The notes under the pieces were generated by a model, which made no database searches, was not told the DNA's origin, and saw only the letters and a list, made by a program, of their open reading frames with translations. A stretch of DNA of 63,861 nt, counting the filler, from Hyphochytrium catenoides (Eukaryota > Protista > Hyphochytriomycota), in assembly GCA_900088475.1 (NCBI GenBank). It is 14 parts of 14 records of this genome, joined end to end, with 100 filler letters (N's around TTAATTAATTAA, not from the genome) between each part and the next. Parts side by side here need not be neighbours in the genome. Positions count along the whole stretch, not along the records: positions 1 to 19,030 come from FLMG01000323.1; 13 more parts are not named here. One strand, given 5' to 3'. This document shows, in pieces, positions 1 through 19,030 of the stretch; position 1 is the stretch's first letter; every line of letters starts with the position of its first letter. The position numbers and the translations under genes were made by a program.

Positions 1-3000
1 CAGAACGTCAACATGATAGCTCACAGTTTACATTGCCCGACTTCATTGTGTGAGGATGCCTTTTCTTACGGAGCACACTGAGGGCTAGGCAGTACAGCAG
101 GATGGATGCCTTGTCTCAAAGACTGCAACACTCTTCCTGAGAACGCGACATACACTTGAGGTTCACAGCTTCCTATACTGTAGGGTAAAAAAAGTGGGCA
201 GTGACAGTGAGAAAGAGTGGACATGTGAGGATGCTCGGCCAAGAGTTTGGTCGTCTGTATTAGGAACTGACAGGCCAACGCGTGAGCCAAGGGTTCCATC
301 GTTCTTGGTACTTGTAGAAAAGGAGGGAAGAAAGGGGTGAAAAAAGATGAGGGTCTTTGGTAGTGGTCCCTACCCACCGTGTCCAAAGCTATAGATAGGC
401 CAGTATTCCAACCAGCCTACCCATCCGTCAGAACGGAAATTTATATCGTAGGATTCAAAAGCTGCTGCTGCTTCACGGTTCTTTTCAGGTCTGTTATGAC
501 CGCAGCTCTTGCAAAATACCTTCCAGTAGAAACGTAACGGGAATTATCATAATTATTCCGCATCAAGAGACTGCCTCCATCATTATCAGACCCAAGCCCA
601 AAAAGACCCACAATCATCACCACCCTCCACCATGAAATCTTTCCTGCGTCTTCAATGGAAATATTACCCTTTGTGTAATAATAGTCTCTACTGCCTGGAA
701 ATCTTTCCTTGGAAAGGAAAAGCTTGAGGATTTATTCAGTGCCTGCCACATACCCCTCTCCACATGTGTGGGAGGATAGAGAAAGGGCACATTGACAAGT
801 GCTTTCTAAGATCTAACTAAGATCATGATTGCGTCTTCGTCTGCTCGATGATGATGATGATGGGGAGGCAGGACCTTTGGTTTAAAATTACTCCGTAGCT
901 GCCAACACAGAGGCGAATGTGAACGTGGCTGAGAGCGACCATCAACTCGTCATCTTAGGCTCTCGATCACCCCTTCCTCAATATGAATGCACGCCCAGAT
1001 GTCGAACATACACCTTCTATTTTCCTCATTAATGCTGTTCTATGTCAGAATGTCAGAAAAAGCGGCGATGAACGATCACACAGCTTCATGGGTCTCTGCT
1101 TGGCTCCAACGCTATCGCAAAACTGATTTGTCCGGTCTCAATAGCAATTGTCGTTCAATAGTAGAACTTCAGTAGAGGTTTGCCTACACGGGAAAACAAG
1201 TTGCATTCAGCATCCAACTTGAACTCTTTGCTTATCCTGATAGCTGATGATAGCTCTCGATGACCCTACTGATTTTGTAGTTCAACCAGAGACAACCATC
1301 ATTTAGCGGCATGTAGACCTTTGACCGCTGATGGGTCAACAAATTCCTCCTCAGTTTTCGCGAGTAGAGGTGTTTCGAAGTGCTGATATGCTTTTCCATT
1401 CTGGGAAGGTTGAACAGAATGTTCATCTTCTGGCCCAGAAAGTTCCAGATTATTACTCTGCAATTATTAGTTAAGAGACAGTTGGCAGAAAACGATGAAC
1501 GCATTGATCAGGATTATTAGCACGCAAGCACCAGGTCCCTCTCTTCTTCTCTGCATTGACTCAGTGCTTTCACTCTCCCGTCGCGCTCGCCATCCATCAA
1601 AGGAGCATTCCAATAATATATTGATGGGTACTGCGAGTGGCTTCATATATGTTTAATTAGACGCTGGGCTCAGGGAGGGGAGAGAGCCACTATCGCAGCG
1701 ATAACAACCGCTATTTTTAGTTATGGCAACAAGGGAAGGTTAGCATAATACATGCGTTATCTTGTTGCTATCTAGAGTGGGCCCTGACTACCTTTGCTTC
1801 AAAACAAGGGTCATCTGGCGCCGATCCGTCCCTCTCAACTTCGTCGCGCCGCATTAGGACAGATGTCAAAGTGTTCATCATGTCAGAAGAAAGAGGCTGG
1901 CTAAAGAACTTCACGACGCGGCGGTCTGTTGCCTTTCGGTAGTTAAGAGTGTTCAGGCACCCGCAAGAAGAGACGGATTCTGGTCACTTGCGTAAATAAG
2001 CGCTGCTAAAGACTTTGTCTTGTTAGGGGAAGCTACATAAACACAGAGACGCCGAGGTGTTGCTTATCCTCACCGGGGGTGATGAAGGACATCAACGCGG
2101 CTTTCTTCCTGAAGAAATCTGAGTTAAGTCATGGTAAGGAATGAGAAAAAGATAGCGCGACAGCAGCCGTGTGGTGAACGCCGTGCCCTTAACGGAATGG
2201 TTCCTATTTATCTCGTACGGCCACTGCGTTTCCGGGTTTGCATCTGTGTCGGCCATTCCTCCACGGTACAACAGCAAACGGTCAACAAAGGGGTCCCTAT
2301 ACCTTAACTACTTGTCTAACGTTCTACAAGCTGTGTATCTATGCCACACAAGGGAGTCCCCTTTCACACAGCAGAGAAATCTCAGCGATGTTCCAGGAGA
2401 ATGACTTCACCCCGGAAGTCAGAGACAGAGACACTCAAGCGACTTGTCCGTGTGCACGCCAGGACCTCAGTCCATCGAATGAAGCAACTTGCCCTTGCTT
2501 TCAAACTGATTTGGAGCTCATCATAGCGACTTCAATGACTTAGGGCAGCAATAAGGCATTCAATCAACTGAGAAGGCGCAGCTTTCACACCACTCATTCC
2601 GGCTCTCCGCTGCTTGCAGCCTTCACTCTGGTCCCACTCTCTTTATAAATTTTATTGTCATGCTATCTCTTAGTGCCTGATCTCCCTCTTCTGGCCTCTA
2701 CCACTGCTGTTGCTCCTCGTAGTAATGCTAACACGAAGAGGGAGCTGGCAGCAACAAACCTCTGGCAAACACTATAGAAAGGGCCGTTTCGCTAACGAGC
2801 CGTTAGCGTCCCGTCGTGAAAGGAAGCAATGAGCAGCCAACAGACAAAGCGCAGCCAAGAGCCATCAATGAGCTCTTCTTGCGCGACTAGCTCAGCGCCG
2901 CCACGCATCTCCGCGCCAGCCCGCTGACTATGGTAGGATTGATAAGCTCATGAGCGAGTGCCAGGCGAAGCGTGAGCTGGGAATACTTATAAGCAAGCTC

Positions 3001-3062
3001 ATATTTGAGGACATCTTGAGGGTTTTGGGGCGAAAGATCGAGGATAGAACGCGGATAGAAAG

Positions 3063-6000
3063 ATGAGCGCGAAGAAGTTCGTCGCTTCAGATGGTAAAGA
3101 GTTCAGTAGTAGGGATGAGTGGAGGAAGTACGAGTTTGCTTTGCGCTACACGGTGAAGAACAAGACCAATGAGAAAGTGGTCAGACACCCAGGAGAAATT
3201 GACGGGTAACCTTTGAGTCGATGACCCATAAGCTCATGGAGTCTGTGACTGACTTAGCATAACATATGTTGATATCTTGGTGCAGACAACCTTTCGACCT
3301 TCAGGATTTGGATGGCTGCGAAGTGTTGCTACTTGACCACTGCGACCAGGTTCAAGTTGATAACGTTAAGAATAGCAGGCTCTTTATAGGTGTGTCCGAT
3401 ACAACTCTTATGAGAGCCGTCGCGTACTCACCTCGAGTTCCTTCGCATCAGGACCTTCTTCTGAGAGTGTCTTCATTAGGGATTGTGCTAACTGCACCGT
3501 CACTGTGGCATGGTACGTCTTCTCCTCTCGCTGGTGCCGTCTCGAGGCTGAATACACTGACGCTTGTCCTTCACTGCCATCCACGTTCGCTACTCTAGCA
3601 AGCAGTTGAGGACTCGGGATTGCCATAATCTGACTTTATACCTCTATTGCATGACGGATCCTATCATCGAGACATCCGATGGGATTCAGGTGGCTCCTTT
3701 CAACGGTAGCTTTCCCAAGCTTGACATGGTAACACGCCCTATCCTATCCAAACGCATTGTCAGCCCTTCTAAAAGTTTCTCTTGCTCCACTACAGTGCTT
3801 TACCGCAGCTCGGCTGGATCCCAGAAACAATCATTGGCAGAACGTCTATGACTTCAATGATGAACAAAAGACGGGAAAGAACTGGAAAATCATACGTAAG
3901 GAATCCGTCTAGCAAGATAGATCCTTACAATCTCTTAGCCATTGTCCTTTATAGCTAAACCAGAGCGGGAACAGACTTGGGTCGTCCCTTTCGCGGAGGG
4001 AGCCGCAGGCAAAGATGAATGCATTAATCCTGTCCCAGAAGATGCCGTCTCAACTACCACTGAGGAACAACTACAGGGCTTGACAACTTATGCAATCAAA
4101 CGGTCCCATAAAGAAGGTATCTGGGGTTTCAATGTATTGACCACGCTTCTCCAATCATAATGCTCAATTCCGTTCCGCAGAGCTTCTGGAGTCCAAACAG
4201 GAACATCCACTACCTCCCTCCAAGGCTCCTGCTTCAATGCCGCCCACAATTCCCATCCCGAAGCAAGCAGTACTGTCACAGGCCAAGCCAACGCCATCAA
4301 CAGACGTGGAGCAGGCTCTTCGGAGCTTCAAATGGCGAATAAAGTGGGCACCGAACCTAAGGCTTCTCTACGTCTTTTATCAGCTGGACCATGAGGCCAT
4401 TGAAGAAAGCCTTTATGCCAAGCTTGCTTCCTTTATGATGACAACCTGCAAGGTACTCCACCGAGCCAGTCAAGCTCTTGCGTCCAAGAAAATAAAAATT
4501 TGGTAAGCCTGAAACTGCATGTGTTCATCGTGTCAGGTCTAAGGGCCATCGCCTTTGTTGCTGTCAATAGGTGGGACCCTGTGGTCGAGAAAGACAGGAC
4601 AAGATTAAGTATGCGGCTCCAGTCTACTGACGAACAGTTAGCAGGACTTATCTTAGTCCCAGATGAATTTGTTGCATGTCGACAGATATCCTTATCCACG
4701 ATGCTTTGTCATTCTCTCTGCTTTCCTCGCTACAAATTATGCTTATCCTAATGTGTCTTAACTCCCACACGGCATGGAGGCAGTGGCCCATCCAATTGTA
4801 CCTGCAGGCAATAGCGAATTCGTTGAGATCTCATCCTTTGAGGCACCGCCAATGTCAGTTGCAGTTGCTAACCTTCCCCTCTGAGCTTTAATCGATTGTC
4901 TTTTTAAAATGGCTAACTCTGCTCCTATTGCCTTCCCTCCTTCGAAACTTTTCACCTAAGCTCTCTCTTTCCTTCCGCCCGACTTCAGTTTTGCAAGATA
5001 TTGTCTTCCTTCCTTACTCTTACGATGACCAATTATCGGCATTTCCCTAGGCTGATTGACACTGAGGGGCGCATCTTACCGGAGGTTGAGGACATGGAGC
5101 CCGCCCTTGCATCATATATCAGCCAGCTAGCACTTATGCTTGACGCTTTCGCCCTTCAGCACGGAATAGTAGAAGACTCCTCAAACTCGGAGATCGACGA
5201 GGCAGGGCCCGTTTCAGTTCCAAGTTCCACTCAAGCCTCTCAACAATCTGAGGCTGCTCATGCTCTTGACAGTAGTTCACGCGAGAGGCTCGCCCATGGC
5301 ATGCAACCTCAGAAAGAGCTTAGCTTCCAAGGTACGTGACGAAGTCTCTCTGTCCTACCTAAACACGAACGTCAAGAGGTTTCTTCCGTTCAACTTTCGC
5401 AGCAGGCAGAGGACAGGATGACGACAAGAAGAAAGCAGCAAACCAGATACCTAAAGCAAATGCGTCTTCGACGGCCAAGCAGTTCGTCGCTTCTGATGGC
5501 AAAGCGTTTGACAGCCGGGACGCATGGCGTAAGTACGAGTTTGAGCTAAAGTACACATTCAGGAACAAAACAGACCAGAAACTAGTCCGTTATCCAGGGG
5601 ATGTCGATGGGTAAGGGCATTCAGTTGTACCTCTCACTCACTCCCCCTTTCCAGTCTAGCACGGTATCTTCCTTTCCTCTTACCGCTCTTCACATGTTTA
5701 TGTGTACTCGACCTCATTTTGCAGCTGCTTTACTGCTTCTGAACTCCGATTGACATCACCTCAGCATGGACACAATAACTCATCTCGACTCTCTTGGCGG
5801 AAATCATGACATGCCTTTCTTATAGGCAACCTTTCGACATAGCCGATATCAAGAACTGTGAAGTGCTGCTGCTGGACCATACAGACCAAGTACAGGTGGA
5901 CAATGTGGAAAATAGTACTCTCTTCATTGGGCCATCCTCTGAGTCCGTCTTCTTGCGGAGCTGCTCGGACTGCGTACTTACTATTGCGTGGTAAGAAGCT

Positions 6001-6707
6001 GAAGGAGAGGTAGATCTGGAATCATGTGGTTAAAAAGCGTGCCCGTTCTTTCTAGCAAGCAACTGCGAACACGTGACTGTAAGAACCTAGAGATCTACCT
6101 CTACTCCCAGACAGACCCGATTATCGAGACTTCTAGCAATATGCGCTTTGCTCCCTTCAATGGAGCGTACAATGGATTACGTGAGGTACACTCTAAGCTG
6201 GAAACCTGAACGCTTGCTCCCAATGTAACTCTTTTACATGTGCGACCTTCCCCAGACATTTCGACTGGCACAGCTGGACCCTAACAACAACCATTGGCAA
6301 GCAGTTTACGACTTTAACGACGAGATGAAGACAGGGATCAACTGGCGTCTCCTGGCGGTAGAAGAACGACGTCCTCAATGGACTGTGGACGTACCTAACG
6401 CTGTTGAAGAGTGCATGAACCCTGTACCCGCTGAAGCTGTTTCAACCACCACCCTAGAGCAACAAGAAGGCAAAGCAGGGAAAGGGTGAGGTTTATTTTT
6501 TCTTTCATTAGACTATGCATCCCTTACTGTCTCTTTACACTACTCCAAGGGCACTTTCCCCACCACCCTTACCATCACCGGCACCCTTATCTCTGCGACG
6601 CTGACTCCTTCGTCCCTCATGATAGCTCCAGAATGCAATCCTTTTCACTATCAACCTCCCAGAAGGAAGCTGAAGTTCTTTTGTCAGAGCCCACGTCAAG
6701 CTCGTAA
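3063..6707 (+). CDS. Multi-exon protein with two tandem TBCC/RP2 (XRP2-like, C-CAP fold) domains; putative Arl3/tubulin GAP
   Basis: ATG 3063 MSAKKFVASDGKEF..PGEIDG|QPFDLQDLDGCEVLLLDHCDQVQVD..IG|PSSESVFIRDC..AC|KQLRTRDC..DPIIETS..PFN..NHWQNVYDFN. A second copy starts ~5475 (AKQFVASDGKAF..GDVDG|QPFDIADIKNCEVLLLDHTDQVQVD..KQLRTRDC..PIIET..NHWQAVYDFN). GT-AG introns join the domain exons in frame (e.g. 3206-3285, 3390-3451). Linker exons 4180-5470 and the stop at 6707 are less certain. Confidence 0.85.
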
Positions 6708-6993
6708 CAGTTGCCCACTAACGAGAGTCCATTTGACTTGGACCCACGGATGTTTGCCAAGTCTATATCGTACACTTCCTTTACCGTTCCCTTACTCTTT
6801 TACGTCCCTTGAGGAAAGAGATATGGCGAGATGAAAAGTAAGCGGCGTGGTGTAGGACCTCATGGAATGGGATAGCCCTATTGCAGCAGAGTCACACCTA
6901 TTTCCTATGATTAGGACAAAGTAGGACAACGGGCATCAGAGATAGTAATATTAAGTGAGCTGAGTCATCCTGCCTCCTCTTGCTCATTGTTAT

Positions 6994-9900
6994 TCAGTGG
7001 CGATCTTCGATAGGAACCAATGCTTCCTGTCTGGGAAAGCGCACCCTGCTGGTTAAAGGCTGGTATGCCCGTTTGAGCTTCTGAGTAAATTGATGAACTC
7101 CGTCTTCCTTGCCTGCCATGCGGAAGAGCTGCCGTATCAGGAGATTAACCTTCAAAGTTGGCTCAATTTTTTCCTCCTTCATCGAGAATATAATAGGATG
7201 TACCCCTTCTGGCCTGCCAGCCTGAATGTAGGCGCGAGCCAGAATCTCGTAAGTCGTCGCATCTGGTGATAATTTAGCCCTGCGTGCCAAGCGAATGTAC
7301 TCGTTTACTTGTTCTACATCTCCAGCCTCGCTGTGTGCCTTCATGGCATAGTTGAAGGTCTGAATGGATACATGATGCGCCTTCAAGGCAGCGAACAACA
7401 TTTTCTCAGCTTCTTTCACTGCCCCCGCCATGCCGAGGCCAAACAGGAGAACCCCAAGGAGGTCGGGTGATTCCAAGGCACCTGCATCAGAGAACTTTCT
7501 AAGCATTGCTCCAAAATTGATCTCCTCTCTTTGCTCACGGTCATGACAGTAGTGCTCAATTAAACTCCGGAAGGGCTTCAGCGTTCCTTTCTCGCACGCC
7601 GACTCCACCACTTCAAGCGCTTGCTGATGCTTACCAGCCTTCGCTAGGCTCAAAGCAACACTGGTCCAAGTGGAGGGGGTAAGATGAATGCCCATGCTCT
7701 CAAACTTCTTCATCTGCTCGCTAACTTTAGCAAGGTCGGAAGTATTGCACAAGCCGATAAGTTGGGCCCTATATACTTGATCTGGGACCGTTCCTCCGTC
7801 CGCTGCTATCCTCTCGATGAGCTCAGCTATAAGGTCGGACCTCCCAAACTTAGCATAGCCAGCTGACAAGGCCACAGATAGAGTTTGATCTTCGACAAGC
7901 TTATAGCCTTTGCCCTGCATTTGAGATAGCACTCGCGAGCAATCTGGGAAACGTCCTGCTTGAGCATATGTGGAAAGAAGTGGGCGATAGATCCACCGGC
8001 TCAATTGCAATCTGTGCCAGCTTCCTCTCGTTCTTGATTCCAGCAAATGACAGCCCTCCAGAAACAATGCTTCAACTGCTCCGATAGCCTGAACATCCGC
8101 ATAACCCTGCATAAGCCGGCCGTACATTTTGGCAGTGCGGGATGTGGCACCCACATCCTGTAGTATGGATTCTGCTCTCACAAAGTCCTCGTTCAGTGCG
8201 TAGTATTGGATCACCTCTTCCAAGGTGGAGGCGGTCATTGGAATGCCCTTACTTCCCATTATGGCAAGCTGTCTAGAAACATCGGCCGCATTTCCGCTTG
8301 CTAGAAAGGACATTAACCCACTATTCTCTGTATCATGTTGGAATGGTGTATTTGGTTCAGACGTAGTCTCTTGAAGAACTGCAGATCCGACAGCCGAATT
8401 GGCAGCTTCTTGTACAGCTGCGCCAATAGCTGATTTCTCTAATCCGAACCGCTGGCAGAGGAGATGAAGTAGGTGTGTCTTCAGCTCTTTGCTCTGGATA
8501 GTCCGTAAGACTTGGTCAACCCTCAAGTAGTCTCCCTTCGAAACTCCATCTACGACCGCTTCGAGCAGTCTGTCGGAATGCATAAGTTCACTGCCCCATC
8601 CATCTTTCCCACTTCTGAAATCTTGGGACACTATTCTTAGTTTGTCGTTAGCTTCGAGCATCTGCCGGACTTCTGGGACCATGATGGCCCTTAGCTGATT
8701 GGTATCAAGCCCTTCGCAGGCAGCTGTCATTACGGCAGAAGAGATGGGTACTCCAGCGAGGACAAAGAGCTTCAGTGCTTCAGCAGCAGCTTGGGATGCT
8801 GTCGACCTGGCCAGATGCCGGGCGAAGGAAGGATTCAGGAGGAGTACCTCGTCCTTTTTTATGAAGTCTTGGACAAGGAAGAGTGCCTCCTTCATATTTC
8901 CATTTTTCACAAAGGACAAGAGCATCCTTTGAGCCTGCGGCACGCCGATACTTAGCTTTAGAGCGCGCATTTTCTGCCAGTAATATCGGAATGACCGCGG
9001 TTGCCGTTGCCGTGCTACTGCCTGCAGAATGAGCTCAAAGGTTTCCTGGTCTGGAGCGCAACCCGTACCCTGCATCATGTCGAAGATCTCCCCAGCTTGC
9101 CTGAAGTTCCTAGCCTCTAAAGCTTTTGAAATAACTCGATTGTAAAGACTTGGTTTGGGCTCCATAGATTGCTCCACCATATGGTTGATCAAGCGAAGTG
9201 CTTCATCAATCTTATGCTCTCGAAGGTGACCCTCTACAAGAAGTTCGTAAGATCGCGCCGTAGGTGCAATGCCTGATTCCATCATCTCAGAGAAAAGCAG
9301 CTTGGCGTGGTTGGGTCTACTAAACTCAAAAGCCGCACTACAGAGGTCTTCATACATATCTCGACCGGGATAAATATCATGGTCCTCCTGCATCGTCCTT
9401 AGAAAGTGGTTGGCTATTGCCAAACTTCTGCTGGATTTGCCAGCATGACGAAAAAATACTGCATAACAGTCGCGGTCTATCCCTGCAGGGTAAGATGCAA
9501 ACTCTTTCAGAAGTTTGGCAGCAACGGCAGCATCCATTTTCTCGTTCCCGTGAAGGTGGTGCTCCAAGATCAATTTGAAGACCTTTCGATTGACTAACCA
9601 TTTTCTCTCTCGGAAGTATGGCAAAAGGGTCTTCGTTACTTGTCTCTCATCTTTCCTGAGACGCGACTGAAGCAAACCACTTAGCAGCTTCTCAATGACA
9701 TGACTGTCCTCCAGCCAGGCCAGACTTGTGGAGTCCATCTGCGTAAGCACGTCTATTCCAGCTTGATATTCATGTCTCTTGATCGCCGCCTCGAAGAAGT
9801 TTTTGAACACTGCAGCTAGATCATACTGGCTACCGTTTACAGCCAGCATCATCTTTTGAAGCTTTTTGATCTCCTCATAGGTGATAGGAGCCGTTTCTGC

Positions 9901-11471
9901 AAGTATTGCAGTGATAATGTCGACGGAGTCGGGAGTCAACCTATTCTTCGTTAGCAGGTCTTTTGCAAGGGCCTGCAGAACTTTTCGGTGCCGTGTCCCC
10001 CGCAACTTCTTTATCAAAGGCTGGTATGAGGCTCCATCCGCATTAAGGCCCAATAGCTCCATCTTCTCCAGGGTCACCCAAAGTGTCCCAAGATCAGTCT
10101 CCGAGTCCATTGCAGTCACTATGTGCTGGTGCATAGCCTTGTCTGCTCAGAGGAACGATGAGCAGTGAAGAGTTCAACTATTGCGTAAAGAAACAAAAAT
10201 ACGTACCGATATGATGGCCTCTGGCCTGCAACTTTTCGACGAGACTGAGGCAAAGATTAAGGTTCCCTGTGTTCGTCGCTTCCCAAAACTGATCCAACAT
10301 CATCTCCACTTCCTTTCTTTTGGTGTAGGGCTTAGCGACAAAGCCTAGCTTTTCTACTGTCGCAATGGTGTCAGCAACTTCTTTTTCTGCGGTGGTGTCG
10401 GCATAAGGGCCAAGCGCCTCTTTCATCGATCTCTTGAGTGAAAGGGTGGATGGCTGCAGTCCTACTTCCTTCATATAGCTAAAGACTTTAGACAGATCAT
10501 TGAGTCGTCCTCCTTTGACCAGATGAGTTATCCAAGGCGAGAAGTGGTCGAGTCCTGGCTGGATCCGAAGGCCTACCATCATTCTGAGAGTAGTTTCGAC
10601 TCCTTCTTTTAAGCCCGCGCTGAGTTGAGCTCTCATGAGTTTAACACAAATACCATCTATTCCTTCGCGAAAGCCTGCCTTTGCCATAAGGTGGATGGTA
10701 TAAAGCGCCTCTTCGTAGTTGCCCAATGCTGTCCAAGCTTCTCCAATTAGTTGGAAGGATTTAGCGTCGGGAAGCACTCCTGCACTCGAGAAGAAGATCA
10801 GCATTCAGTGAAGTGCCTGGGCAACATCTTGTCTTACCTGAATAGCGAACCTCTTTCACTAGTTTTTCAGCTAATGTTGGGCCTACTTCACCAAGATTAG
10901 GTGAGCAGAGCAATCGTAGAATTTCATTTAGCTGGGCAGACGATATCCTTGCCGAGGTTTGCATGAAAGCTTCCTGCAGAAACAAACCCGCCTCTGTCGT
11001 CAGACCTTCATTCAGTAAGCTAGACGCGACATTGACGATGTCGTCGGCAGACGGAACCTCTCCTCTTGCCAGCTTTGTGTCATACTGCATTTTGAACCTC
11101 GAACTACCGCCTAACTTGGGCACGATAAGTTTGCGTGGCTTTTTCAGTGCGACAGAGAGGACCCTATCCATCTCGCTCTGTAAGGTCTTCAACTGGGGAG
11201 TCTTTTTATCGAGGATGTCAAGCATTAAGTTATCTAGCTGAGGTGCCACCGTCGAGTACTGAGCTGACCGGGTCTGATAAAAGTGAGGTTGTTTCAGCGC
11301 TTCACCTGATTGGCATAAGGGAACAAGCAACGTAGGCGCAGAGCGCTGCTCCCTTAATTGGTAGAGTCTGAAGTAATGAGGTCTCTGGATAACTTCCAGA
11401 CTTCCTCGGTGATGAGCACAACCATGGTGCCTGAGCACCGTAGAACCTACTCGTAGTCTTCCCTTGAACAT
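6994..11471 (-). CDS. Large pentatricopeptide-repeat (PPR) protein, ~1451 aa, probably mitochondrial
   Basis: Exons 11471-10838, 10779-10207 and 10142-6994 (4356 nt) joined by GT-AG introns. Repeated ~35-aa motifs (M.ESGIAPTARSYELLV, MEPKPSLYNRVI, GCAPDQETFELIL, LSPDATTYEILA). Arg-rich, acid-poor N-terminus. Confidence 0.9.
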
Positions 11472-13279
11472 CGTCGTCACCTAATTCGTGAAAGTCTCCT
11501 TCTCTGACAAGACCCTAAAGATCTTACTCAAGCAATCGCACCCCATTCATTGCACCGGAGGTGTTACTGGGCATGTCTGCATCTAATCAGGACGAGAGTG
11601 CACGAACCCCACGAGTGCAAGGCTTGACAGAAACCCCTTTGGGCTCTCTCACCATCAGCAAGGGTGACACTATCGATGAAGACTGACGCGTGGATACCGC
11701 TACGTATGAAAAGCTCAGACACCGATGACGGGATGAGAGTCAATGCCGATGAGCCAAACCAATGCACACGAAGACGGTGTTCTTGACGATGAAGATCTGG
11801 TCTAGCAGCACGCCCCAATCTTCATTCATCATGAGAGGCGGATGGTGGCGCGAATCGGCCTCTCCTTATCACACCCTGTCCTGTGATGTACACTCATACA
11901 GACAGGGACATCCCAGTCGTGGAGGTCGCTAACGTGCACTCTCTAGTAGTATGATTGTCTCACTGTCTTATAATCAGCATTCGACTTGTCAGCTCTTGTT
12001 CCATCTTTTGCCTACTTGGGACAGAGTTGATGGATGATCCAGGTGCTTGGCAGCTTGGCCCTTCAATCTGTTCTAGAAGGGCACGCGGTTGATGCGCATC
12101 AGGCCTCCTCTCCCAGTCTTAATTGCCAGGTGAGTGCCTGCTTGATGCTCTAGCCGGAGCCAGAGCCCTCCACTTAGTATACGTCCTAACGGGATCTGAG
12201 AATCTGAGGAGTTGGCAAGGACGCATGGCTGTGGAGAGCTCTATTCAGGACTCGCCCGGTTGTTAAGTTAAGACCTATACCCTGCCCCAAACTCTTCTTC
12301 CGGACTGATTACCTCTAACAGCATTGCTTCTTCCGTCGCTGGAAATTGCTCATGTCAGGTCCGGATCTGCTGTGCCGGTCCCACAGCATCGCAAACGAAG
12401 TGCTGGAAGATCCTTTGCTTGTTTTACTCTTTGCTCAACATATATGCGATGACTCTATGTTAGGGCTTGATCGTTCCCCAGATCAAGACCTAGACAATTG
12501 CCGAGTTACCCGTCGAGGATAAGGCGCGACGAGAGGAGATATTCTATTGAAAAGGCCATGTCTGGGTCAGACAAGCTTAATACTACTTCAGTACGGCTCT
12601 ATCAACCCCTCCGCCCCGGCTATCGAGAGAACTGAGTCCCTCATCGCACCGCTGGGAGGATGCATTCTAGAAACCATTGCTCTCTTCATCCTTTTGGTCA
12701 CATCCACTCTAGAGTTGATGATAGAGGTAGACCTCTGTCCGATGAGGCTTAGCAACACCAGGACGAGCTCGTTTAGCAGGTCTCTGCTTGCTCAGGCAAC
12801 GAGTCTACTTCTCATCTCCTCGTCTACCTGAAGAATGAACGAGTCCTGAGGTTACCGAAGATTATCGAGGTTCATTCTCGAACCCACAGAGGGAAATCTT
12901 GTCCTGCCCTTGACGGCCTTTTGCAAGTTGCAGGCCATCCACTGACCGTTACCTCTGAGAGTGGTCATCTGACAGCAGATGGATTGCTGCTGCTCAATTG
13001 GCGAATGCTCTCCAACGTCCATTAGTGCGTGCAGGTTATCTCCATTTTCCTCCAATCAAGACATTCAGTACTTATGACGATCGGTTAAATCTTAGCGTAC
13101 AGTTGGGGATCCATCATATGAGCTTCCATTACTAGAGCACTGTGACGCATATTTCTCTCTGTGACGGATGTTTGTCTCCCAGGGAGATGATCTCATAAGC
13201 ACATGCTAAGGAGTGAATATTATTATCATACACCAGCTTGTAGCACCAGGAAGCCCGACACTGATAATAAATAACATTC

Positions 13280-15716
13280 TTAACGTCTGAAGCCACCTCG
13301 TCCTCCGCCACGCCCACTATTACCTCCTCTGCCTCCTCTTCCTCTGCTGAAGCCTCGTCCTCCGCCTCTACCACCTCGGCCTCCGAACGAAGACGACCCC
13401 ATATTGAAGCGTGGACCTGAACCATTCTGGTGGCTACTGTACTCTCTGGCTTTGACAGTAGGTAGCGTCGAGGGGACGCTGTATGGAGAGTCTCCATCTT
13501 CAAGCAATTTCTTTAGAGTCTTTTGGCCCTCCAAGGGCAAATCGAACACGGCACCTCGGGAATCATCAGTCAACGTCATTCCCTTTACACCGTTCGCCAC
13601 CTCCTCGGAAAAGTCCCTGTTGATGGCATTCCACACATAGCGAGTTGCGAAGATGGTCTGAGGGCTGCTAAATTGGATCGTGACGAAACCTGGGGCACCC
13701 GTAAGCAGAGACTTCCGGAGCAAAGGACTAGTATAACCAGTAATGCAGGCCAAAGCTCCGGATAATGCTGCCACAGCCCCTATTTTGAGACGATTCAGTA
13801 TACATACGGTATCCTTGTAACGAACACATTACAGCATTCTCACCCTTTTCATCAATCAGCCTTTTAGCGACCTCCTCAAAAAGGGGCAGAACCTCCTCAT
13901 GGACGGCCTCGATCTCCTCGGAGGCTCCCCTGGCTGTGGCCTCAATAATCTGCTCAGGCGTCGGTGCCGCTGTATACTCAAACTTGTTTCCAGATCGTCT
14001 TTCAATCTCTTGAAGAGTATCTTTTTGCCTGGTTGTGAATAGAGTCACGCAGACGCCTTTTCGCCCAGCTCTGCCAGTCCTCCCAGACCTATGGATATAT
14101 GTCTCAACATCTGGCTTGCCAGTGAAGTTCGTCTTTGGGGGCTCATTGTTGATAACAAGATCCACTTCCATATCAATACCTCGTGCCGCAACGTCCGTTG
14201 CGATGAGGCACTGGAACTAAATAATAGCGCAAAAGACGGGTTAGTATGAGTTATTTCGCATTATAGAAGATTGTTTCTTTCAATAGAAGGGACTCAGTTT
14301 GCAGTTAAAAAGCTTATTTTTGTTGCAATCATAGACATCATGCAAAATAATGAAGCTCATCATCGTCCCCGTTACACCTCAAAGTGCAAACTGAACACAA
14401 CTACGAGTGTGAGGAAGCAGTGCCAATGATACCTTTCTTTCGCGAAAAGCTTGCATCGTTGTTTCACGCTGGCCTTGAGCAATGTCACCGTGCAGCACCT
14501 GACATTCAAACTTCAAGTCTGAGTTTACTGCCAGCTCGTTGGCCTCTTTCTTTGTCTCCACAAAGACAATTGTCCGACCCTTGCTTCCTCCGCCATACCT
14601 GCATTCCACCGTGCGTTAGGTCTAGCAATGGGATGAAGACGGGAGGGACACAAAAGCACATACACAGATATGAGGTCTCGGATTGTGGCGGGCTTCTGTT
14701 GCCAATGGCAGCTGATGGCTAGATGTTTCACATCCTTTGAAGCTCTTCCTCCATCTTTCTCAACTAGGTCAACGATTTCCTTATCATCCTTCATATACTT
14801 TTCGACCAGCTGGTTGACCCACTGTGGTATCGTCGCTGAGAACAAAAGAGTTTGACGAGGTTTTGTCCCCTGCTCCTGAATTGCCTGGAAAACTTTATCT
14901 ACATCTTCCTTGAACCCCATTTCTAACATGCGATCAGCTTCGTCAAGGATAAAGAACTCAATATCCTGGAGTTTTAAGTTCTTCCTATCCAAGTGGTCCA
15001 GAATTCGCCCTGGAGTACCAACCACAACGTCTATACCCTATCATAGTGACCATTAGCGACTAGGTATCAGCAAGCCTCATGGGGGATGCTCTTACCTGGC
15101 GCATTTCGCGTTCCTGCTTGTCATAAGAGCTGCCTCCATATATTGTGGTTGTTGTTAGGGATGGCCCCGCGGTTTTGAATTCTTCTGCTACTTGCATGGC
15201 CAGCTCACGAGTTGGAGCCATAACAATTGCTCGTGGAGCTCTGCCGTACTTGGTTGCACTCTTACTAAGGAGCTTCTCAATCACCGGCAGTGCAAAGGCG
15301 AGAGTCTTTCCCATTCCAGTACGAGCACGTCCTAGGATGTCTTTGCCGTCATAAATCTTATCGAAGGTAAGGGCTTGAATGGGAAATAAGGCTGAAATCC
15401 CTCTCCCCTCTAAGGCCGTAATGGTCTGCTGACTAAGCCGAAACTGAGTAAGAGGTGGGTTGCCCCCCTCCGCCGTATTTTGTCTCTCCGCAGCATCGAT
15501 GGATCGCGTCCGCATGCGCCGCTTGATGGGACTATCATCTGGCGAAGACGAAGCCTTTCTCTTCTTGGACTTCTTCTCCATGACGACCTCTACGTCGACG
15601 GATTCTGCCCCAGCTGCGGCAACATCCTCCAAGACAGACTTGGACTTCTCCTTCTTCTCTTTTTTCTCCTTCTTTTCCTTCTTCAGCTTCTTCGGCTTAT
15701 CCAATTTTATAGACAT
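13280..15716 (-). CDS. DDX21: Nucleolar DEAD-box RNA helicase of the DDX21/DDX50/RH7 (Gu) type, with GUCT domain and RGG tail
   Basis: Exons 15716-15096, 15037-14664, 14598-14433, 14216-13844, 13779-13280. Motifs [49 protein letters not shown]. Lys-rich N-terminus, RKSLLTG..GAVFD GUCT-like region, RGG-rich C-terminus. Confidence 0.93.
14289..14369 (-). ncRNA. Intronic box C/D snoRNA guiding 18S rRNA 2'-O-methylation
   Basis: Within intron 3 (14217-14432), minus strand reads GGGAC-G-ATGATGA (box C, 14363-14357) ... ATGA (D') ... ATGATTG (C') ... AGCTTTTTAACTGCAA-A-CTGA (box D, 14297-14294)-GTCCC. A 5-bp terminal stem closes it. The 16-nt guide is complementary to the conserved 18S segment TTGCAGTTAAAAAGCT. 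Confidence 0.9.
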
Positions 15717-16161
15717 CGCACCAACTCGTAAAGTCGACTTGTGCCTTTACGCAAACGTGTTCTTGATGGACCAGGTTGTGCCTTTGCGCGGACGGCTTCA
15801 AAGGAGTCTCCTTCTGCGGAGATTGAGTGCAATGACACTGAAACTCGACTTAGGACCTAGCTACTTTAAGCCCTTAGTCTCGTCGCGAGTTACAGCCCAG
15901 GCGATCTCCTAAAGGTTAACCATTGGCTGCTCTTTCCCAGCCGCGAGCAAGGAGTAGGTTCTAAGCAGTACGAGTGAAAGACCAAGCCCGATGTCCAGGT
16001 CCAGAAGTGTCGCTTGATGAAAGCTCAGAATGCACTCGCCAACCACCAACCGATCCCGTTGACCGCTAACCGCTAAGGCCTCTATAAAATCAGACTCAAG
16101 GTTATCGATTTGCGATAACCCTGTGGGTAGTCAAATCAATTCTTATGTTGGGGATTATTTT

Positions 16162-16185
16162 GGGACTTGGGACTTGGGACTTGGG
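16162..16185 (+). repeat. (GGGACTT)n tandem heptamer; canonical G-quadruplex motif
   Basis: GGG-ACTT-GGG-ACTT-GGG-ACTT-GGG in the region between the divergent helicase and GST genes. Confidence 0.7.
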
Positions 16186-16557
16186 ACCACGTCCGGACCA
16201 CAGCAGAGTCTAACGTGCGAGCTGACGTGACATCAGATGGAGCATGCAACAACAATAAAGATACAGCGACAATAATCAAGAGCTTGTTTATGATTCCTGG
16301 GACAGTGCACAAGCATTGGCACAAGCACTAGTAGTGCTCCCCAGAAGTAGGAGGTCAAGACCCTGTCAGGACCCCCTTTCCGCCTCCAGAAGCCCGAAGA
16401 GGATACGATATCCTGATTGCTCATTGCCGTCATCATTGCATTTTCATCTCGTGATTGGCATGCCAAGATAAGCATCCATTAAGGGAACGGCAAGAACGTT
16501 CAACAGGCTCCGTGTTATATTAACGAAGACAATAGGTCAAAACGGTCGCTCCCACTT

Positions 16558-17659
16558 ATGGCAATTCGAATATTCGGCCACGGAATCAGCCAGCCATCAA
16601 GAGCAGGTACTAGCCAACAACAAGCTTGGTTTTAGTAAGAAAACATTGCATGGCCTTATCCTAATCAGGTTTGGGACGCTTCACCCGGTGGGAACTTCTT
16701 GCTGGACTCTCTTTCTTCCTGCAGTGACATGGCTCTGTGCCATCAACAACCTTCCATATGAATTCAAGAAAGTGGACTTGGCGAAGGGCGAGGCAAGGAA
16801 GCCGGATTTTGCCAGGGTAAATCCAGCTCGTAAGGTGCCCGTTATCCAGGATGGCAACTTTACTCTATTCGAGAGGTAGGACTCATGCTGCACAACGTAA
16901 GCAATCATCATTTGAGGTCCTCACCCATCCCTCCGTCATGGACCAATCAGCCACGCAATTATGGCCTACCTGTGTAGCAAGCATGGATGGACCTCGTGGT
17001 ATCCTGAGGATGTTACAAAGCGAGCTTTGGTAAGTATCCTGAGGGCAGTAGTCAAACCTAACTCCAATTTATCGTCAGACGACACCAACAGCTCTGTCGC
17101 TTGCCACTGCTATGCAGGTTGACCAATACCTCCACTGGCATCACATCAATACGCGTCGAATCACAATTGACCTAGTCAGACATGTCGCTTTCAACCCAGG
17201 AAAGCTATCTCGCGACGCCCCGGTAAATAGCTCTCTTTTAGATTCTGAGCCGATATTCTCCGATTGCTAACCTTTATCCACGCCTGTAGGAGCTTGTTAG
17301 GGGCCGTAAAGTGGTGAACGAAGTCCTGCAGCTGCTGGAGACTTTCCTAGAGCGGCAAAGAGGAAGGTATTTGGCGAGTGAGGACCATCCCACTATTGCA
17401 GACCTGGCCTGCTATTGTGAGCTAGATCAGTTGGAGATTCTAGAGCTCTACGACTTCAGCAGCTATCCCAGAGTTACAGACTGGATGTCTCGAATGAAGG
17501 TAGAGAGCTAAACTCTTTTCTAGATACCGTCTAGTGCAATTAAAAGCTCAATGTCACTTTGTTGTGGGTATGCAGAAACTGCCGGAATATGAGGAGCAGC
17601 ATGGATCTCTTTTCAAACTTGCGCAAATTTTGAAGCAAGCTGACGCCTCCAAGCTCTAA
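16558..17659 (+). CDS. Theta-class glutathione S-transferase with C-terminal SKL (PTS1)
   Basis: Six exons: MAIRIFGHGISQPSRAV|TWLCAINNLPYE..VNPARKVPVIQDGNFTLFES|HAIMAYL..WYPED..RAL|VDQYLHWHH..|..PTIADLACYCELDQL..RMK|KLPEY..DASKL*. SQPSR and DQYLxWHH are theta-GST hallmarks. Confidence 0.92.
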
Positions 17660-18983
17660 CAGCCCGGGCGTAACCCACCATGGCTTAAACATTTTGCACA
17701 AGTCTTCTCTACGTGATGAGCACCGTACAGGGAACATAGCTGGAGATCCGTAGGATGTACAGACATGATAAAAAAGCAGATACGGAGGCTGGTTCTTCCC
17801 TTTTAGACGTAGTGCCACCTACCCAATTTTCTCCGTTACCTACTACTCAGTAATGCAGCCTATCATGCCAGGGGAAGTGTCTATGATTGCTTTGTCCGTC
17901 AAAAAAAGATTCCACCAACTTGGGAAGTGGTTCCTCCTGACACGTGGTGATTAGTTCTTACATGTCTGTAAAAGCTACAAGGAAACAACGAGGAACCATG
18001 ACAGTTGGAAAGGCGCCGTCTGAAAAGGAAAGGGAGCTCATTGTTGGGATGCTTGGTTCTGCCTCTACTAATCGTCTTTTAGAGCTTCAGAACTCAAGCA
18101 GGAAGCTTTCCAGAGGATTAAAGGACTCTAGGAATGTACCAGTACTGTACTTCTTGGTCTACCCAAGACCACTAGTAGTGCTCAAGAATTACACTGATCA
18201 TCTAACCAGGTTAACTCACCTGCAGTCAGCCCCCTGGTCAAGGGCAATATTCGCGTGGCAGGAGCGATTTGATATTGAAGTGCTCATGCCACATACCTTT
18301 TCCACTAATCTGGTTAACCGCTAAGGCACCTACTTGGGTTTCTGTCTGTGGCAATAGAAAGGTTCAGTAGTTGCGTTACTGCCACTTTCCTCCAACGGCC
18401 GCTAACGCCATTTTTTCGGGTACGTGGCACTATCCTCTTCCCAAGAATTACTTGTCGGGTTTCCTATGGGTCATTTGATGGCGAGCAACTGGGTCACCCA
18501 GTGAAGAATGAACAGCTGAATGAACCAGTGATTGCTTCCTTCTGTCCCTACAAACACTAACCTTACGACGTCGTACGATGTTATGATGGTGGGCAGCGTG
18601 TGAAGCTCAGGCGTAGTCTGTGCTTGTGAAAATCTATGAGCCTACCAGCTGCAACTGGCTGCTCTAGAACCTACAAGGCGTAATCCACATGGCTCACTAC
18701 GTTTACCACCATAAACCTTCCTCCTAACAATCACACTTACTTGCTTAACCGCCATATAGCGGAGTTGACCCTACATGTTGTGTGTGTTGGTGAGAGAGAG
18801 ACCTGATCAGAAGACTTCATCATCCTTCCTCTTCCTGGACCAACTAAGAGTCCCGCAGTTCTAAATGTTATGGGTGGGGGAAGGCGATGACTTTATTGGT
18901 CCTTTTATAGGGGGCAGAGGGCCATCATCAGGAAAAGATAAGAATTCAACCCTTTGTATGGGTCTACTGGGTATGTGCTGTTA

Positions 18984-19030
18984 TTAGAGCATCTCCACCG
19001 GGGGTCTCTATCGCTATCTCTATCGCTATA
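18984..19030 (+). mobile_element. Probable terminus of a PIF/Harbinger (Tourist-like) element
   Basis: TTA followed by GAGCATCTCCA, which matches the Tourist-type TIR and TTA target site. The scaffold ends 33 bp later. Confidence 0.5.

What the first reader, a model, noticed from the sequence alone, without database searches (positions are those of the whole stretch)
14289..14369. Box C/D snoRNA in a DDX21-type helicase intron, predicting an unusual 18S methylation site
Seen: this 216-nt intron is over three times longer than the gene's other introns. It holds box C, box D, a GGGAC/GTCCC stem and a 16-nt antisense element, with box D ~77 nt from the 3' splice site and upstream of a TACTAAC branch point. 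Known (from recall): this 18S segment is targeted by yeast snR47 / human U36 at the first A of UUAAAAAG. Inference: the D+5 rule here selects the C of UUGCAG, five nt upstream, a possibly lineage-specific Cm. The D' element (GCTTCATTATTTTGC) has no target I can assign. A ribosome-biogenesis host gene would couple helicase and guide expression.
Basis: partly seen in the sequence, partly recalled or inferred. Interest (0 to 1): 0.75.

Follow-up and report, generated by a model that had tools for sequence, protein, structure and literature searches.

The report
Intronic box C/D snoRNA, shifted 18S target
The long intron of a DDX21-type RNA helicase gene holds a textbook box C/D small nucleolar RNA whose 16-base guide should direct methylation of an 18S rRNA cytidine five bases upstream of the classic U36/snR47 site; that site is missing from yeast, human and plant maps, but a Tetrahymena snoRNA and several uncultured eukaryotes carry the same guide.

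Summary
On the minus strand, intron 3 (14432..14217, 216 nt) of a DEAD/Helicase_C/GUCT/RGG helicase gene holds an 83-nt box C/D snoRNA (14370..14288). The gene's other introns are 58, 65 and 64 nt.

The snoRNA has a 6-bp terminal stem, box C AUGAUGA and box D CUGA. Its 16-nt guide pairs perfectly with 18S UUGCAGUUAAAAAGCU. The 3' end lies 47 nt upstream of the TACTAAC branch A and 71 nt from the 3' splice site.

The guide duplex (-22.6 kcal/mol) beats 99-100 of 100 shuffled guides. The D' element does no better than shuffles on seven eukaryotic rDNA units, so it is an orphan.

The fifth base upstream of box D faces the C of UUGCAG (yeast C614 equivalent). This is not the U36/snR47 adenosine. 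The RNA fails the SNORD36 threshold (22.7 bits against 30) and lacks the U36 D' guide.

The site is not unique to this lineage. Tetrahymena TtnuCD9 (Rfam RF02286) has the same guide in the same register. So do at least four or five unrelated snoRNA-like loci in metagenomes.

Published maps or predictions for yeast, human, Arabidopsis, tomato, tobacco, Dictyostelium and Ostreococcus list no methylation at this cytidine.

Expression and methylation were not tested. The organism is unidentified. Verdict: a new member of a known kind, of modest interest.

The parts
13280..15716 (-). Host gene CDS: DDX21/DDX50/RH7-type DEAD-box helicase. It has a K-rich N-terminus, DEAD, Helicase_C and GUCT domains and an RGG tail, in 5 exons.
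   Evidence: Pfam on single exons: DEAD 6.9e-23 and 5.4e-18, Helicase_C 9.4e-09, GUCT 7.6e-21. Exon/intron model from frames and splice sites. Homologues are named DDX21 by JGI.
14217..14432 (-). Intron 3, 216 nt, GUAUCA...UUAG, phase 0. It hosts the snoRNA.
   Evidence: The acceptor at 14217 keeps [11 protein letters not shown], which aligns with GKFRVLIATDV of homologues. The other introns are 15095-15038 (58 nt), 14663-14599 (65 nt) and 13843-13780 (64 nt).
14288..14370 (-). Predicted mature box C/D snoRNA, about 83 nt.
   Evidence: Boxes, stem and guide read directly. The fold keeps the terminal stem. All sub-threshold Rfam matches that span this stretch end to end are C/D snoRNA families. 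One of 2 strict C/D architectures in the window, against 0.135 per shuffle.
14365..14370 (-). 5' arm of the terminal stem, GGGGAC.
   Evidence: Pairs with GUCCCU at 14293-14288: 5 Watson-Crick pairs plus 1 G-U.
14357..14363 (-). Box C, AUGAUGA. It matches the RUGAUGA consensus exactly.
14342..14356 (-). D' spacer GCUUCAUUAUUUUGC. It is an orphan; no significant rRNA complementarity was found.
   Evidence: Best duplexes on 7 eukaryotic rDNA units are -11.6 to -13.8 kcal/mol. Between 62 and 100 of 100 shuffled guides do as well. Only 9-12 bp G-U-rich matches turn up.
14338..14341 (-). Degenerate box D' (AUGA).
   Evidence: Read directly. It aligns to the D' CUGA of the SNORD36 model and to the AUGAU of TtnuCD9.
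14326..14331 (-). Degenerate box C' (UGAUUG).
   Evidence: Read directly. It aligns to the C' of SNORD36 and to UAUGAUUACA of TtnuCD9.
14299..14314 (-). D guide AGCUUUUUAACUGCAA. It occupies positions 2-17 upstream of box D and pairs with 18S UUGCAGUUAAAAAGCU. Position 5 (G at 14302) faces the C of UUGCAG.
   Evidence: Single exact match in the window. 16-bp duplex of -22.6 kcal/mol, beaten by 0-1 of 100 shuffles. In the 18S context AAGUUGUUGCAGUUAAAAAGCUCGUAG, position 1 (A) faces G and position 18 (A) faces C.
14294..14297 (-). Box D, CUGA.
14288..14293 (-). 3' arm of the terminal stem, GUCCCU.
14240..14246 (-). Branch-point consensus UACUAAC. The branch A is at 14241, 24 nt from the 3' splice site and 47 nt downstream of the snoRNA 3' end.
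   Evidence: The spacing fits the published optimum of about 50 nt upstream of the branch point (PMC8162545).

Best explanation
This is a genuine intron-encoded box C/D snoRNA gene.

Proposed biogenesis (inferred): the helicase pre-mRNA is transcribed and spliced. The C/D core proteins (Snu13, Nop58, Nop56, fibrillarin) assemble on the K-turn formed by box C AUGAUGA, box D CUGA and the 6-bp terminal stem. Exonucleases then trim the debranched intron down to an RNA of about 83 nt.

Proposed function (inferred): the 16-nt guide just upstream of box D pairs with 18S UUGCAGUUAAAAAGCU in the pre-rRNA. Fibrillarin then 2'-O-methylates the nucleotide opposite the fifth guide position. That nucleotide is the C of UUGCAG, equivalent to yeast C614, Arabidopsis C618 or human C663. 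It lies five bases 5' of the adenosine methylated by U36/snR47.

The D' half, with its degenerate AUGA and UGAUUG boxes, most likely has no rRNA target.

Shown here: the sequence architecture, its position in the intron, the significance of the guide complementarity, the guide register, and the recurrence of that guide register in other eukaryotes.

Inferred only: expression, processing, snoRNP assembly and the methylation itself.
For: - Perfect boxes, a 6-bp stem and a length of 83 nt, in the sense orientation inside the gene's one oversized intron.
- C/D architecture is rare by chance: 2 sites against 0.135 per shuffle.
- The guide duplex is 16 bp and -22.6 kcal/mol, better than 99-100 of 100 shuffles on seven rDNA units.
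- Spacing is 47 nt to the branch A and 71 nt to the 3' splice site, matching the optimum for splicing-dependent C/D assembly (PMC8162545).
- The fifth-nucleotide rule and the usual guide length of 10-21 nt come from the same review.
- All sub-threshold Rfam hits covering the full element are C/D snoRNAs.
- The five extra bases, relative to a U36 guide, are all complementary to 18S. That argues for selection on the shifted register.
- The same guide-to-box register occurs in Tetrahymena TtnuCD9.
- It also occurs in metagenomic snoRNA-like loci: L026 (GUGAUGA, 6-bp stem), L010/L021, L023, and a conserved intronic family of 10 loci. In that family the guide is invariant while the flanks diverge, and a second guide matches 25S.
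- Introns of ribosome-biogenesis genes, including an RNA helicase gene, host C/D snoRNAs in Ostreococcus (PMC7671301 Table S3).
Against: - There are no RNA data.
- No Rfam family reaches its gathering score.
- No orthologous intron was available. The closest protein relatives are at most 56% identical and read straight through the intron site.
- The organism's own 18S was not seen, so presence of the target rests on the wide occurrence of this segment.
- No published methylation map that I could read shows a Cm at this position.
- Boxes C' and D' are degenerate, and the D' spacer is an orphan.
Confidence: 0.8

Rival explanations
1. It is simply the U36/snR47 (SNORD36) orthologue and methylates the canonical first A of UUAAAAAG. 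On this view the five extra bases only lengthen the duplex.
For: Eleven guide bases (AGCUUUUUAAC) are identical to the SNORD36 consensus. SNORD36 is the second-best Rfam hit at 22.7 bits.
Against: - The canonical A would face guide position 10. The box D ruler methylates position 5 (PMC8162545).
- The score is below the gathering threshold of 30.
- The D' guide is unrelated to the U36 guide GAAUUUCUUCAC.
- There is no alternative CUGA closer to the AAC.
- TtnuCD9 and the metagenomic loci keep exactly the shifted register.
Confidence: 0.05
2. It is a decaying or non-expressed snoRNA relic (pseudogene), or a chance look-alike, inside an unusually long intron.
For: There is no expression evidence. 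Boxes C' and D' are degenerate and the D' spacer is an orphan. No Rfam family is reached.
Against: - Boxes C and D are perfect, the stem is 6 bp, and the 16-nt guide is uninterrupted.
- The position relative to the branch point is optimal.
- The joint chance of the architecture and the guide is about 1e-7 per window (and my arithmetic).
- The intron is long by just about the length of the insert.
Confidence: 0.08
3. It is a real C/D snoRNP that binds this 18S segment mainly as a folding or processing chaperone, or that has its main target elsewhere through the D' spacer (snRNA, tRNA, mRNA). On this view there is little or no methylation at the C.
For: - The 16-bp duplex is longer than needed for guiding.
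- It spans the U36 site and the plant SnoR13 site (U615) region.
- The D' spacer has no rRNA target.
- Non-canonical C/D functions are documented (PMC8162545).
Against: - Long guides of up to 21 nt are normal for methylation guides.
- The guide register is conserved across unrelated snoRNAs. That is expected if the position of the methyl group matters, and is not needed for mere binding.
Confidence: 0.07

Closest known systems
Tetrahymena thermophila TtnuCD9 (Rfam RF02286; Andersen and Nielsen 2011/2012, PMC3273799)
   Same: The D guide has the same register...UUUAACUGCAAgCUGA there...UUUAACUGCAAACUGA here. The same 18S cytidine is therefore predicted. The degenerate internal boxes are also similar (AUGAU ... 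UAUGAUU.CA).
   Different: - Only 19.8 bits against a gathering score of 70.
- TtnuCD9 is 55 nt with a 12-nt guide and little terminal stem. This RNA is 83 nt with a 16-nt guide and a 6-bp stem.
- The D' spacers are unrelated (AACAACGCUCGU there, GCUUCAUUAUUUUGC here).
- The paper's own target table (Supplementary Table S2) is not held, so its stated target could not be read.
SNORD36 / U36 / snR47 / AtU36 / Dictyostelium CD25 / Ot-CDsno3 (Rfam RF00049)
   Same: It pairs with the same 18S segment and shares 11 guide bases (AGCUUUUUAAC). It has the same overall C-D'-C'-D layout. It is intronic, as in vertebrates.
   Different: - Six bases (UGCAAA) lie between the shared AAC and box D, where U36 has a single base. 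This shifts the target from the A (yeast A619, human A668) to the C five bases upstream.
- The score is 22.7 bits, below the gathering score of 30.
- The U36-type 25S guide is absent.
Arabidopsis SnoR13 (18S Um615)
   Same: It targets the neighbouring position, three bases 5' of the predicted C, in the same 18S segment (PMC8053127 Table 1).
   Different: It has a different register and target nucleotide. No Rfam similarity to SnoR13 was detected.
Unnamed metagenomic snoRNA-like loci (L026; L010/L021; L023; L008/L022; a family of 10 intronic loci including L007, L009, L013, L016)
   Same: Identical guide GCUUUUUAACUGCAA, then one base, then CUGA. The predicted target C is therefore identical.
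   Different: Outside the guide there is no sequence similarity to this RNA. In the 10-locus family the guide sits upstream of the internal D' box, and the terminal boxes are UGACGA / CCGA. Their organisms are unknown.

Membership tests
Box C/D snoRNA (methylation guide class) | Box C RUGAUGA near the 5' end and box D CUGA near the 3' end | tested here: met
   AUGAUGA at 14363-14357 and CUGA at 14297-14294, both exact.
Box C/D snoRNA (methylation guide class) | Short terminal stem that brings boxes C and D together | tested here: met
   GGGGAC/GUCCCU, 6 bp including one G-U, kept in the MFE and centroid folds.
Box C/D snoRNA (methylation guide class) | Antisense element of 10-21 nt immediately upstream of box D or D', complementary to rRNA or snRNA | tested here: met
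   16 contiguous Watson-Crick pairs with 18S, starting at position 2 from box D. -22.6 kcal/mol, with 0-1 of 100 shuffles as good.
Box C/D snoRNA (methylation guide class) | Accumulates as a stable RNA of about 60-120 nt bound by fibrillarin, Nop56, Nop58 and Snu13 | not testable with these tools
   No RNA run holds the locus.
Box C/D snoRNA (methylation guide class) | The target nucleotide is 2'-O-methylated in vivo | not testable with these tools
   No RiboMeth-seq data for this organism.
SNORD36 / U36 / snR47 (RF00049) | Reaches the Rfam gathering score | tested here: not met
   22.7 bits against 30. Nothing is found at gathering thresholds.
SNORD36 / U36 / snR47 (RF00049) | The D guide places the first A of UUAAAAAG at position 5 from box D | tested here: not met
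   The model alignment needs a 5-nt insertion (ugcaa) before box D. Position 5 is a G facing the C of UUGCAG.
SNORD36 / U36 / snR47 (RF00049) | D' guide to the large-subunit rRNA (consensus GAAUUUCUUCAC) | tested here: not met
   The D' spacer is GCUUCAUUAUUUUGC, with no significant rRNA match.
TtnuCD9 (RF02286) | Reaches the Rfam gathering score | tested here: not met
   19.8 bits against 70.
TtnuCD9 (RF02286) | D guide ...AACUGCAA-N-CUGA, giving the same target cytidine | tested here: met
   The consensus UUUAACUGCAAgCUGA aligns to UUUAACUGCAAACUGA.
TtnuCD9 (RF02286) | Common descent (alignable sequence outside the guide and boxes) | tested here: inconclusive
   Only the boxes and the guide align, and the D' spacers differ. 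Convergence on the same target cannot be excluded.
DDX21/DDX50/RH7-type helicase (host gene) | DEAD + Helicase_C core followed by a GUCT domain | tested here: met
   Pfam PF00270, PF00271 and PF08152 on separate exons.

The most novel reading that the evidence does not exclude
The cytidine of 18S UUGCAG (yeast C614 equivalent) is an old and widely distributed 2'-O-methylation site. It is absent from opisthokont, plant and amoebozoan model maps. It is guided in ciliates, in this organism and in several uncultured eukaryotes by snoRNAs that share one guide register. These guides and the U36/snR47 guides may be sister derivatives of one ancestral antisense element, related by a 5-nt shift of box D.
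Probability: 0.3. Interest if true: 0.45.

Novelty: new member of a known kind. Interest (0 to 1): 0.3.

Why it matters
It adds a well-formed snoRNA gene, and a concrete and easily testable methylation site, to a eukaryote with no snoRNA annotation that I could find.

It also shows that a guide for this cytidine recurs in distant lineages. The set of rRNA methylation sites known from yeast, human, plants and Dictyostelium therefore under-represents what eukaryotes use in this junction of the 18S central domain.

The U36-versus-this-guide pair illustrates how moving box D by a few bases can retarget a snoRNA along one rRNA segment.

The helicase host fits the known habit of placing snoRNAs in ribosome-biogenesis genes. 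None of this changes how C/D snoRNAs are understood to work.

Tried and rejected
- **Rfam at gathering thresholds** on the window and on 14 metagenomic loci: no snoRNA family. The permissive scan of six loci also gave nothing.
  - By oversight, the local Rfam scan of window 1-19030 by reference covered them. It reported nothing there.
- **Orthologous intron.** The best relatives of exon 4 are at most 56% identical. Those inspected have no intron at this site. Exact look-ups of two window ORFs found nothing.
- **Viral contigs** scans for the guide and for 18S: empty.
- **D' target.**
  - Contiguous-pairing scans gave only 9-12 bp G-U-rich matches: 25S GCAAAAUAG, 25S UGUAGAAUAA, 25S UAGAAUAAUG, and 18S GGAAUAAUGAA in two loci.
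  - Duplex energies on 7 rDNA units were no better than shuffled guides.
  - I rejected all of these as targets. snRNA and tRNA targets could not be tested.
- **Second C/D-like architecture** at 848-932 (+). It lies on a GAT repeat and its guide has no rRNA match, so I rejected it.
- **Weak snoU82P hit** at 2076-2114. At 39 nt it is too short, and I did not pursue it.
- **Taxon.** Atlas neighbours point to fungi for the PPR gene and to diatoms for the GUCT exon. This is inconclusive.
- **Literature search** for a named Cm at this site (Cm614, Cm663, Cm618): only the unrelated 25S Cm663 turned up.
- **TtnuCD9's published target table** is not held.
- **Contaminant rDNA.** Of the eukaryotic rDNA contigs fetched from genome contigs, those with G+C of 0.52 or more were left unexamined as a precaution. 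I took no contig for human.
Full report
**What is in the sequence**

The finding lies on the minus strand. The surrounding gene runs from the ATG at 15716 to the stop at 13280.

Searched exon by exon, it has two DEAD-domain pieces, Helicase_C, a GUCT domain and an RGG tail.

Frames and splice signals give four introns:
- 15095-15038, 58 nt
- 14663-14599, 65 nt
- 14432-14217, 216 nt
- 13843-13780, 64 nt

The acceptor of the long intron is fixed at 14217. That choice keeps [11 protein letters not shown], which lines up with GKFRVLIATDV in homologues. The long intron is 3.3 times the next longest, as claimed.

**Anatomy of the element**

Read 5' to 3' on the minus strand:

| Feature | Sequence | Coordinates |
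|---|---|---|
| 5' stem arm | GGGGAC | 14370-14365 |
| spacer | G | 14364 |
| box C | AUGAUGA | 14363-14357 |
| D' spacer | GCUUCAUUAUUUUGC | 14356-14342 |
| box D' (degenerate) | AUGA | 14341-14338 |
| box C' (degenerate) | UGAUUG | 14331-14326 |
| D guide | AGCUUUUUAACUGCAA | 14314-14299 |
| position 1 | A | 14298 |
| box D | CUGA | 14297-14294 |
| 3' stem arm | GUCCCU | 14293-14288 |

- The stem survives in both the minimum-energy and centroid folds.
- UACUAAC sits at 14246-14240. The branch A is 47 nt beyond the snoRNA 3' end and 24 nt from the acceptor.
- Box D ends 77 nt from the acceptor.
- A review of C/D biogenesis gives about 50 nt upstream of the branch point as the optimum for splicing-coupled assembly. 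The same review gives the fifth nucleotide upstream of box D or D' as the methylation ruler, with guides of 10-21 nt (PMC8162545).

**Is it more than chance?**

- A strict scan (exact RUGAUGA, CUGA 45-125 nt on, flanking stem of 5 bp or more) finds two sites in the real window, against a mean of 0.135 in 200 dinucleotide shuffles.
- The other site, 848-932 (+), lies on a GAT repeat and has no rRNA complementarity.
- For an 18S reference I fetched eukaryotic rDNA contigs that contaminate prokaryote assemblies. I used only those with G+C below 0.52 and left the rest untouched as a precaution. I took none for human.
- These contigs were retrieved with a 24-mer that contains the target. Their agreement on the target itself is therefore by construction. 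Only the flanks (AAGUUG upstream) are independent.
- On seven such rDNA units the D guide forms the same 16-bp duplex at -22.6 kcal/mol. Only 0-1 of 100 shuffled guides match that, and the null median is about -13.7.
- The wide use of primers containing GAGCTTTTTAACTGCAAC for SSU rDNA of protists and sponges supports the generality of the segment. So do the U36 guides of animals, yeast, plants, Dictyostelium and Ostreococcus.
- I could not see this organism's own 18S.

**Which nucleotide?**

Counting from box D, the guide positions are 1 = A (facing G, unpaired), 2 = A, 3 = A, 4 = C, 5 = G. Position 5 pairs with the C of UUGCAG.

In the SNORD36 model the guide is GAGCUUUUUAAC-c-CUGA, and position 5 pairs with the first A of AAAAAG. 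Infernal can align our RNA to that model only by inserting 'ugcaa' before box D.

Published tables equate that A across species: yeast Am619 (snR47), human Am668 (U36), Arabidopsis Am621/623 (U36) and Dictyostelium Am612 (CD25) (PMC8817022; PMC8053127).

The predicted site is the cytidine five bases upstream (yeast C614, Arabidopsis C618, human C663 by offset).

All five extra guide bases are complementary to 18S. A random insertion would achieve that about once in a thousand, so the shifted register looks selected.

**Family membership**

- Nothing reaches a gathering score.
- SNORD36 scores 22.7 against 30. The U36 D' guide (GAAUUUCUUCAC) is absent and the target differs. Three defining features of that family are therefore tested and not met.
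- The top hit, snR60/Z15 (25 against 41), aligns only on boxes and stem.
- The informative hit is Tetrahymena TtnuCD9 (RF02286, 19.8 against 70). Its consensus ends UUUAACUGCAAgCUGA, the same guide in the same register. An experimentally cloned ciliate snoRNA (PMC3273799) thus already predicts this cytidine.
- Its supplementary target table is not held, and the main text does not name the site.

**Is the site lineage-specific?**

I scanned the metagenome contigs for GCTTTTTAACTGCAANCTGA, a pattern that 18S itself cannot match. It gave 21 loci.

Four have no box C and look like the few chance hits expected (L011, L012, L014, L020). The rest fall into at least five unrelated types.

| Loci | Features |
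|---|---|
| L026 | GUGAUGA, 6-bp stem, 79 nt from C to D |
| L010/L021 | AUGACGA, 5-bp stem |
| L023 | AUGAUGA, weak stem |
| L008/L022 | weaker boxes |
| L024 | cut off at the contig end |
| 10 intronic loci from G+C-rich marine contigs | see below |

In the 10-locus family an element of about 85 nt is conserved while the intron around it diverges. The 18S guide precedes an internal CUGA followed by CUGAUGA. A second guide pairs 10-12 bp with the conserved 25S segment CAUGUUGGGACC.

The guide for this cytidine is therefore recurrent across eukaryotes.

Conversely, no methylation is listed at this position in:
- the Arabidopsis RiboMeth-seq table, which shows U615 and A623 but nothing between
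- the Dictyostelium, yeast and human columns of PMC8817022 Table 1. That table lists only sites methylated in Dictyostelium, so its yeast, human and plant columns are not independent evidence of absence
- the plant, human, yeast and Ostreococcus table. For non-plant species that table lists only sites shared with plants
- the full Ostreococcus tauri predicted-target list, which has 18S.A604 for its SNORD36 orthologue and no C599

'Unusual relative to model organisms' is fair. 'Lineage-specific' is not supported.

**The D' spacer**

- Contiguous-pairing scans on 63 rDNA contigs give only 9-12 bp matches rich in G-U pairs.
- Duplex energies (-11.6 to -13.8 kcal/mol) are matched by 62-100 of 100 shuffled spacers.
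- None of the candidate D'+5 nucleotides coincides with a methylation site listed in the tables I could read.
- I treat the spacer as an orphan. Variable rRNA regions of the organism itself, and its snRNAs and tRNAs, remain untested.

**Host gene and organism**

- A ribosome-biogenesis host is a known pattern. In Ostreococcus, C/D snoRNAs sit in introns of an RNA helicase, an rRNA methyltransferase, Sda1 and RPL9 (PMC7671301 Table S3). The coupling idea is plausible but ordinary and untested.
- The organism is coded in the run table.
- Relatives of exon 4 are at most 56% identical and mostly marine.
- Language-model neighbours are fungal for the adjacent PPR gene and diatom-like for the GUCT exon.
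- I cannot name the lineage.

**Limits**

- No expression, processing or methylation evidence was obtained.
A whole-window Rfam scan by reference did cover them by oversight and reported nothing there.
- No orthologous intron was found, so there is no covariation test of the stem in close relatives.

**Verdict**

This is a real-looking intronic box C/D snoRNA (confidence 0.8). It is predicted to guide Cm five bases upstream of the U36/snR47 site.

By Rfam score it belongs neither to SNORD36 nor to TtnuCD9. Functionally it is the counterpart of TtnuCD9. It is a new member of a known kind and of modest interest.

Noticed in passing
L007, L009, L013, L015, L016, L017, L018, L019, L025, L027 (about 85 nt around the pattern match; for example L007:426-595 minus strand): A conserved intronic dual-guide C/D snoRNA family in G+C-rich marine metagenome contigs. 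Its terminal boxes are UGACGA and CCGA, while its internal D' and C' boxes are canonical (CUGA, UGAUGA). The U-U position of the terminal K-turn appears replaced by C-C in every member. Its second guide matches 25S CAUGUUGGGACC.
   Followed up: partly
window 848-932 (+): A second strict C/D-like architecture (GAUGAUGA ... CUGA with a 5-bp stem) overlapping a GAT repeat. Its would-be guide has no rRNA complementarity. It is probably chance.
   Followed up: partly
window 2076-2114 (+): A weak sub-threshold Rfam match to snoU82P (18.8 bits, E 0.62): GUGAUGA ... CUGA within only 39 nt. That is too short for a typical eukaryotic snoRNA.
   Followed up: partly
window 14342-14356 versus 14299-14318 (-): The D' spacer and the D guide share their ends: AGCUU... 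at the 5' end and ...UGCA just before the box. The D' half might be a decayed internal duplicate of the D half. I did not test this statistically.
   Followed up: no
window 6994-11480 (-): A large pentatricopeptide-repeat (PPR) gene. It has a 1046-aa ORF plus upstream PPR-bearing ORFs, so it is probably multi-exon. Its nearest language-model clusters are fungal.
   Followed up: partly
window 3266-3598 (+) and 16646-16879 (+): An ORF with a tubulin-binding cofactor C (TBCC) domain. Separately, an ORF whose translation looks like a glutathione S-transferase N-terminus; that reading is by eye only.
   Followed up: no
L028-L107 (genome contigs): More than 91 contigs filed under bacterial or archaeal species-representative genomes carry eukaryotic 18S rDNA, many with whole rDNA units. 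In other words, there is eukaryotic contamination in prokaryote assemblies.
   Followed up: partly
L005:1100-1560: The closest marine relative of the helicase exon lies beside long CCCTAA/CCCAAA-type repeat tracts. It has no intron at the position of the snoRNA-bearing intron.
   Followed up: no
window 15645-15685: The lysine-rich low-complexity N-terminal coding stretch ([10 protein letters not shown]) tripped the reads tool's filter. The tool said this is no evidence of anything.
   Followed up: no
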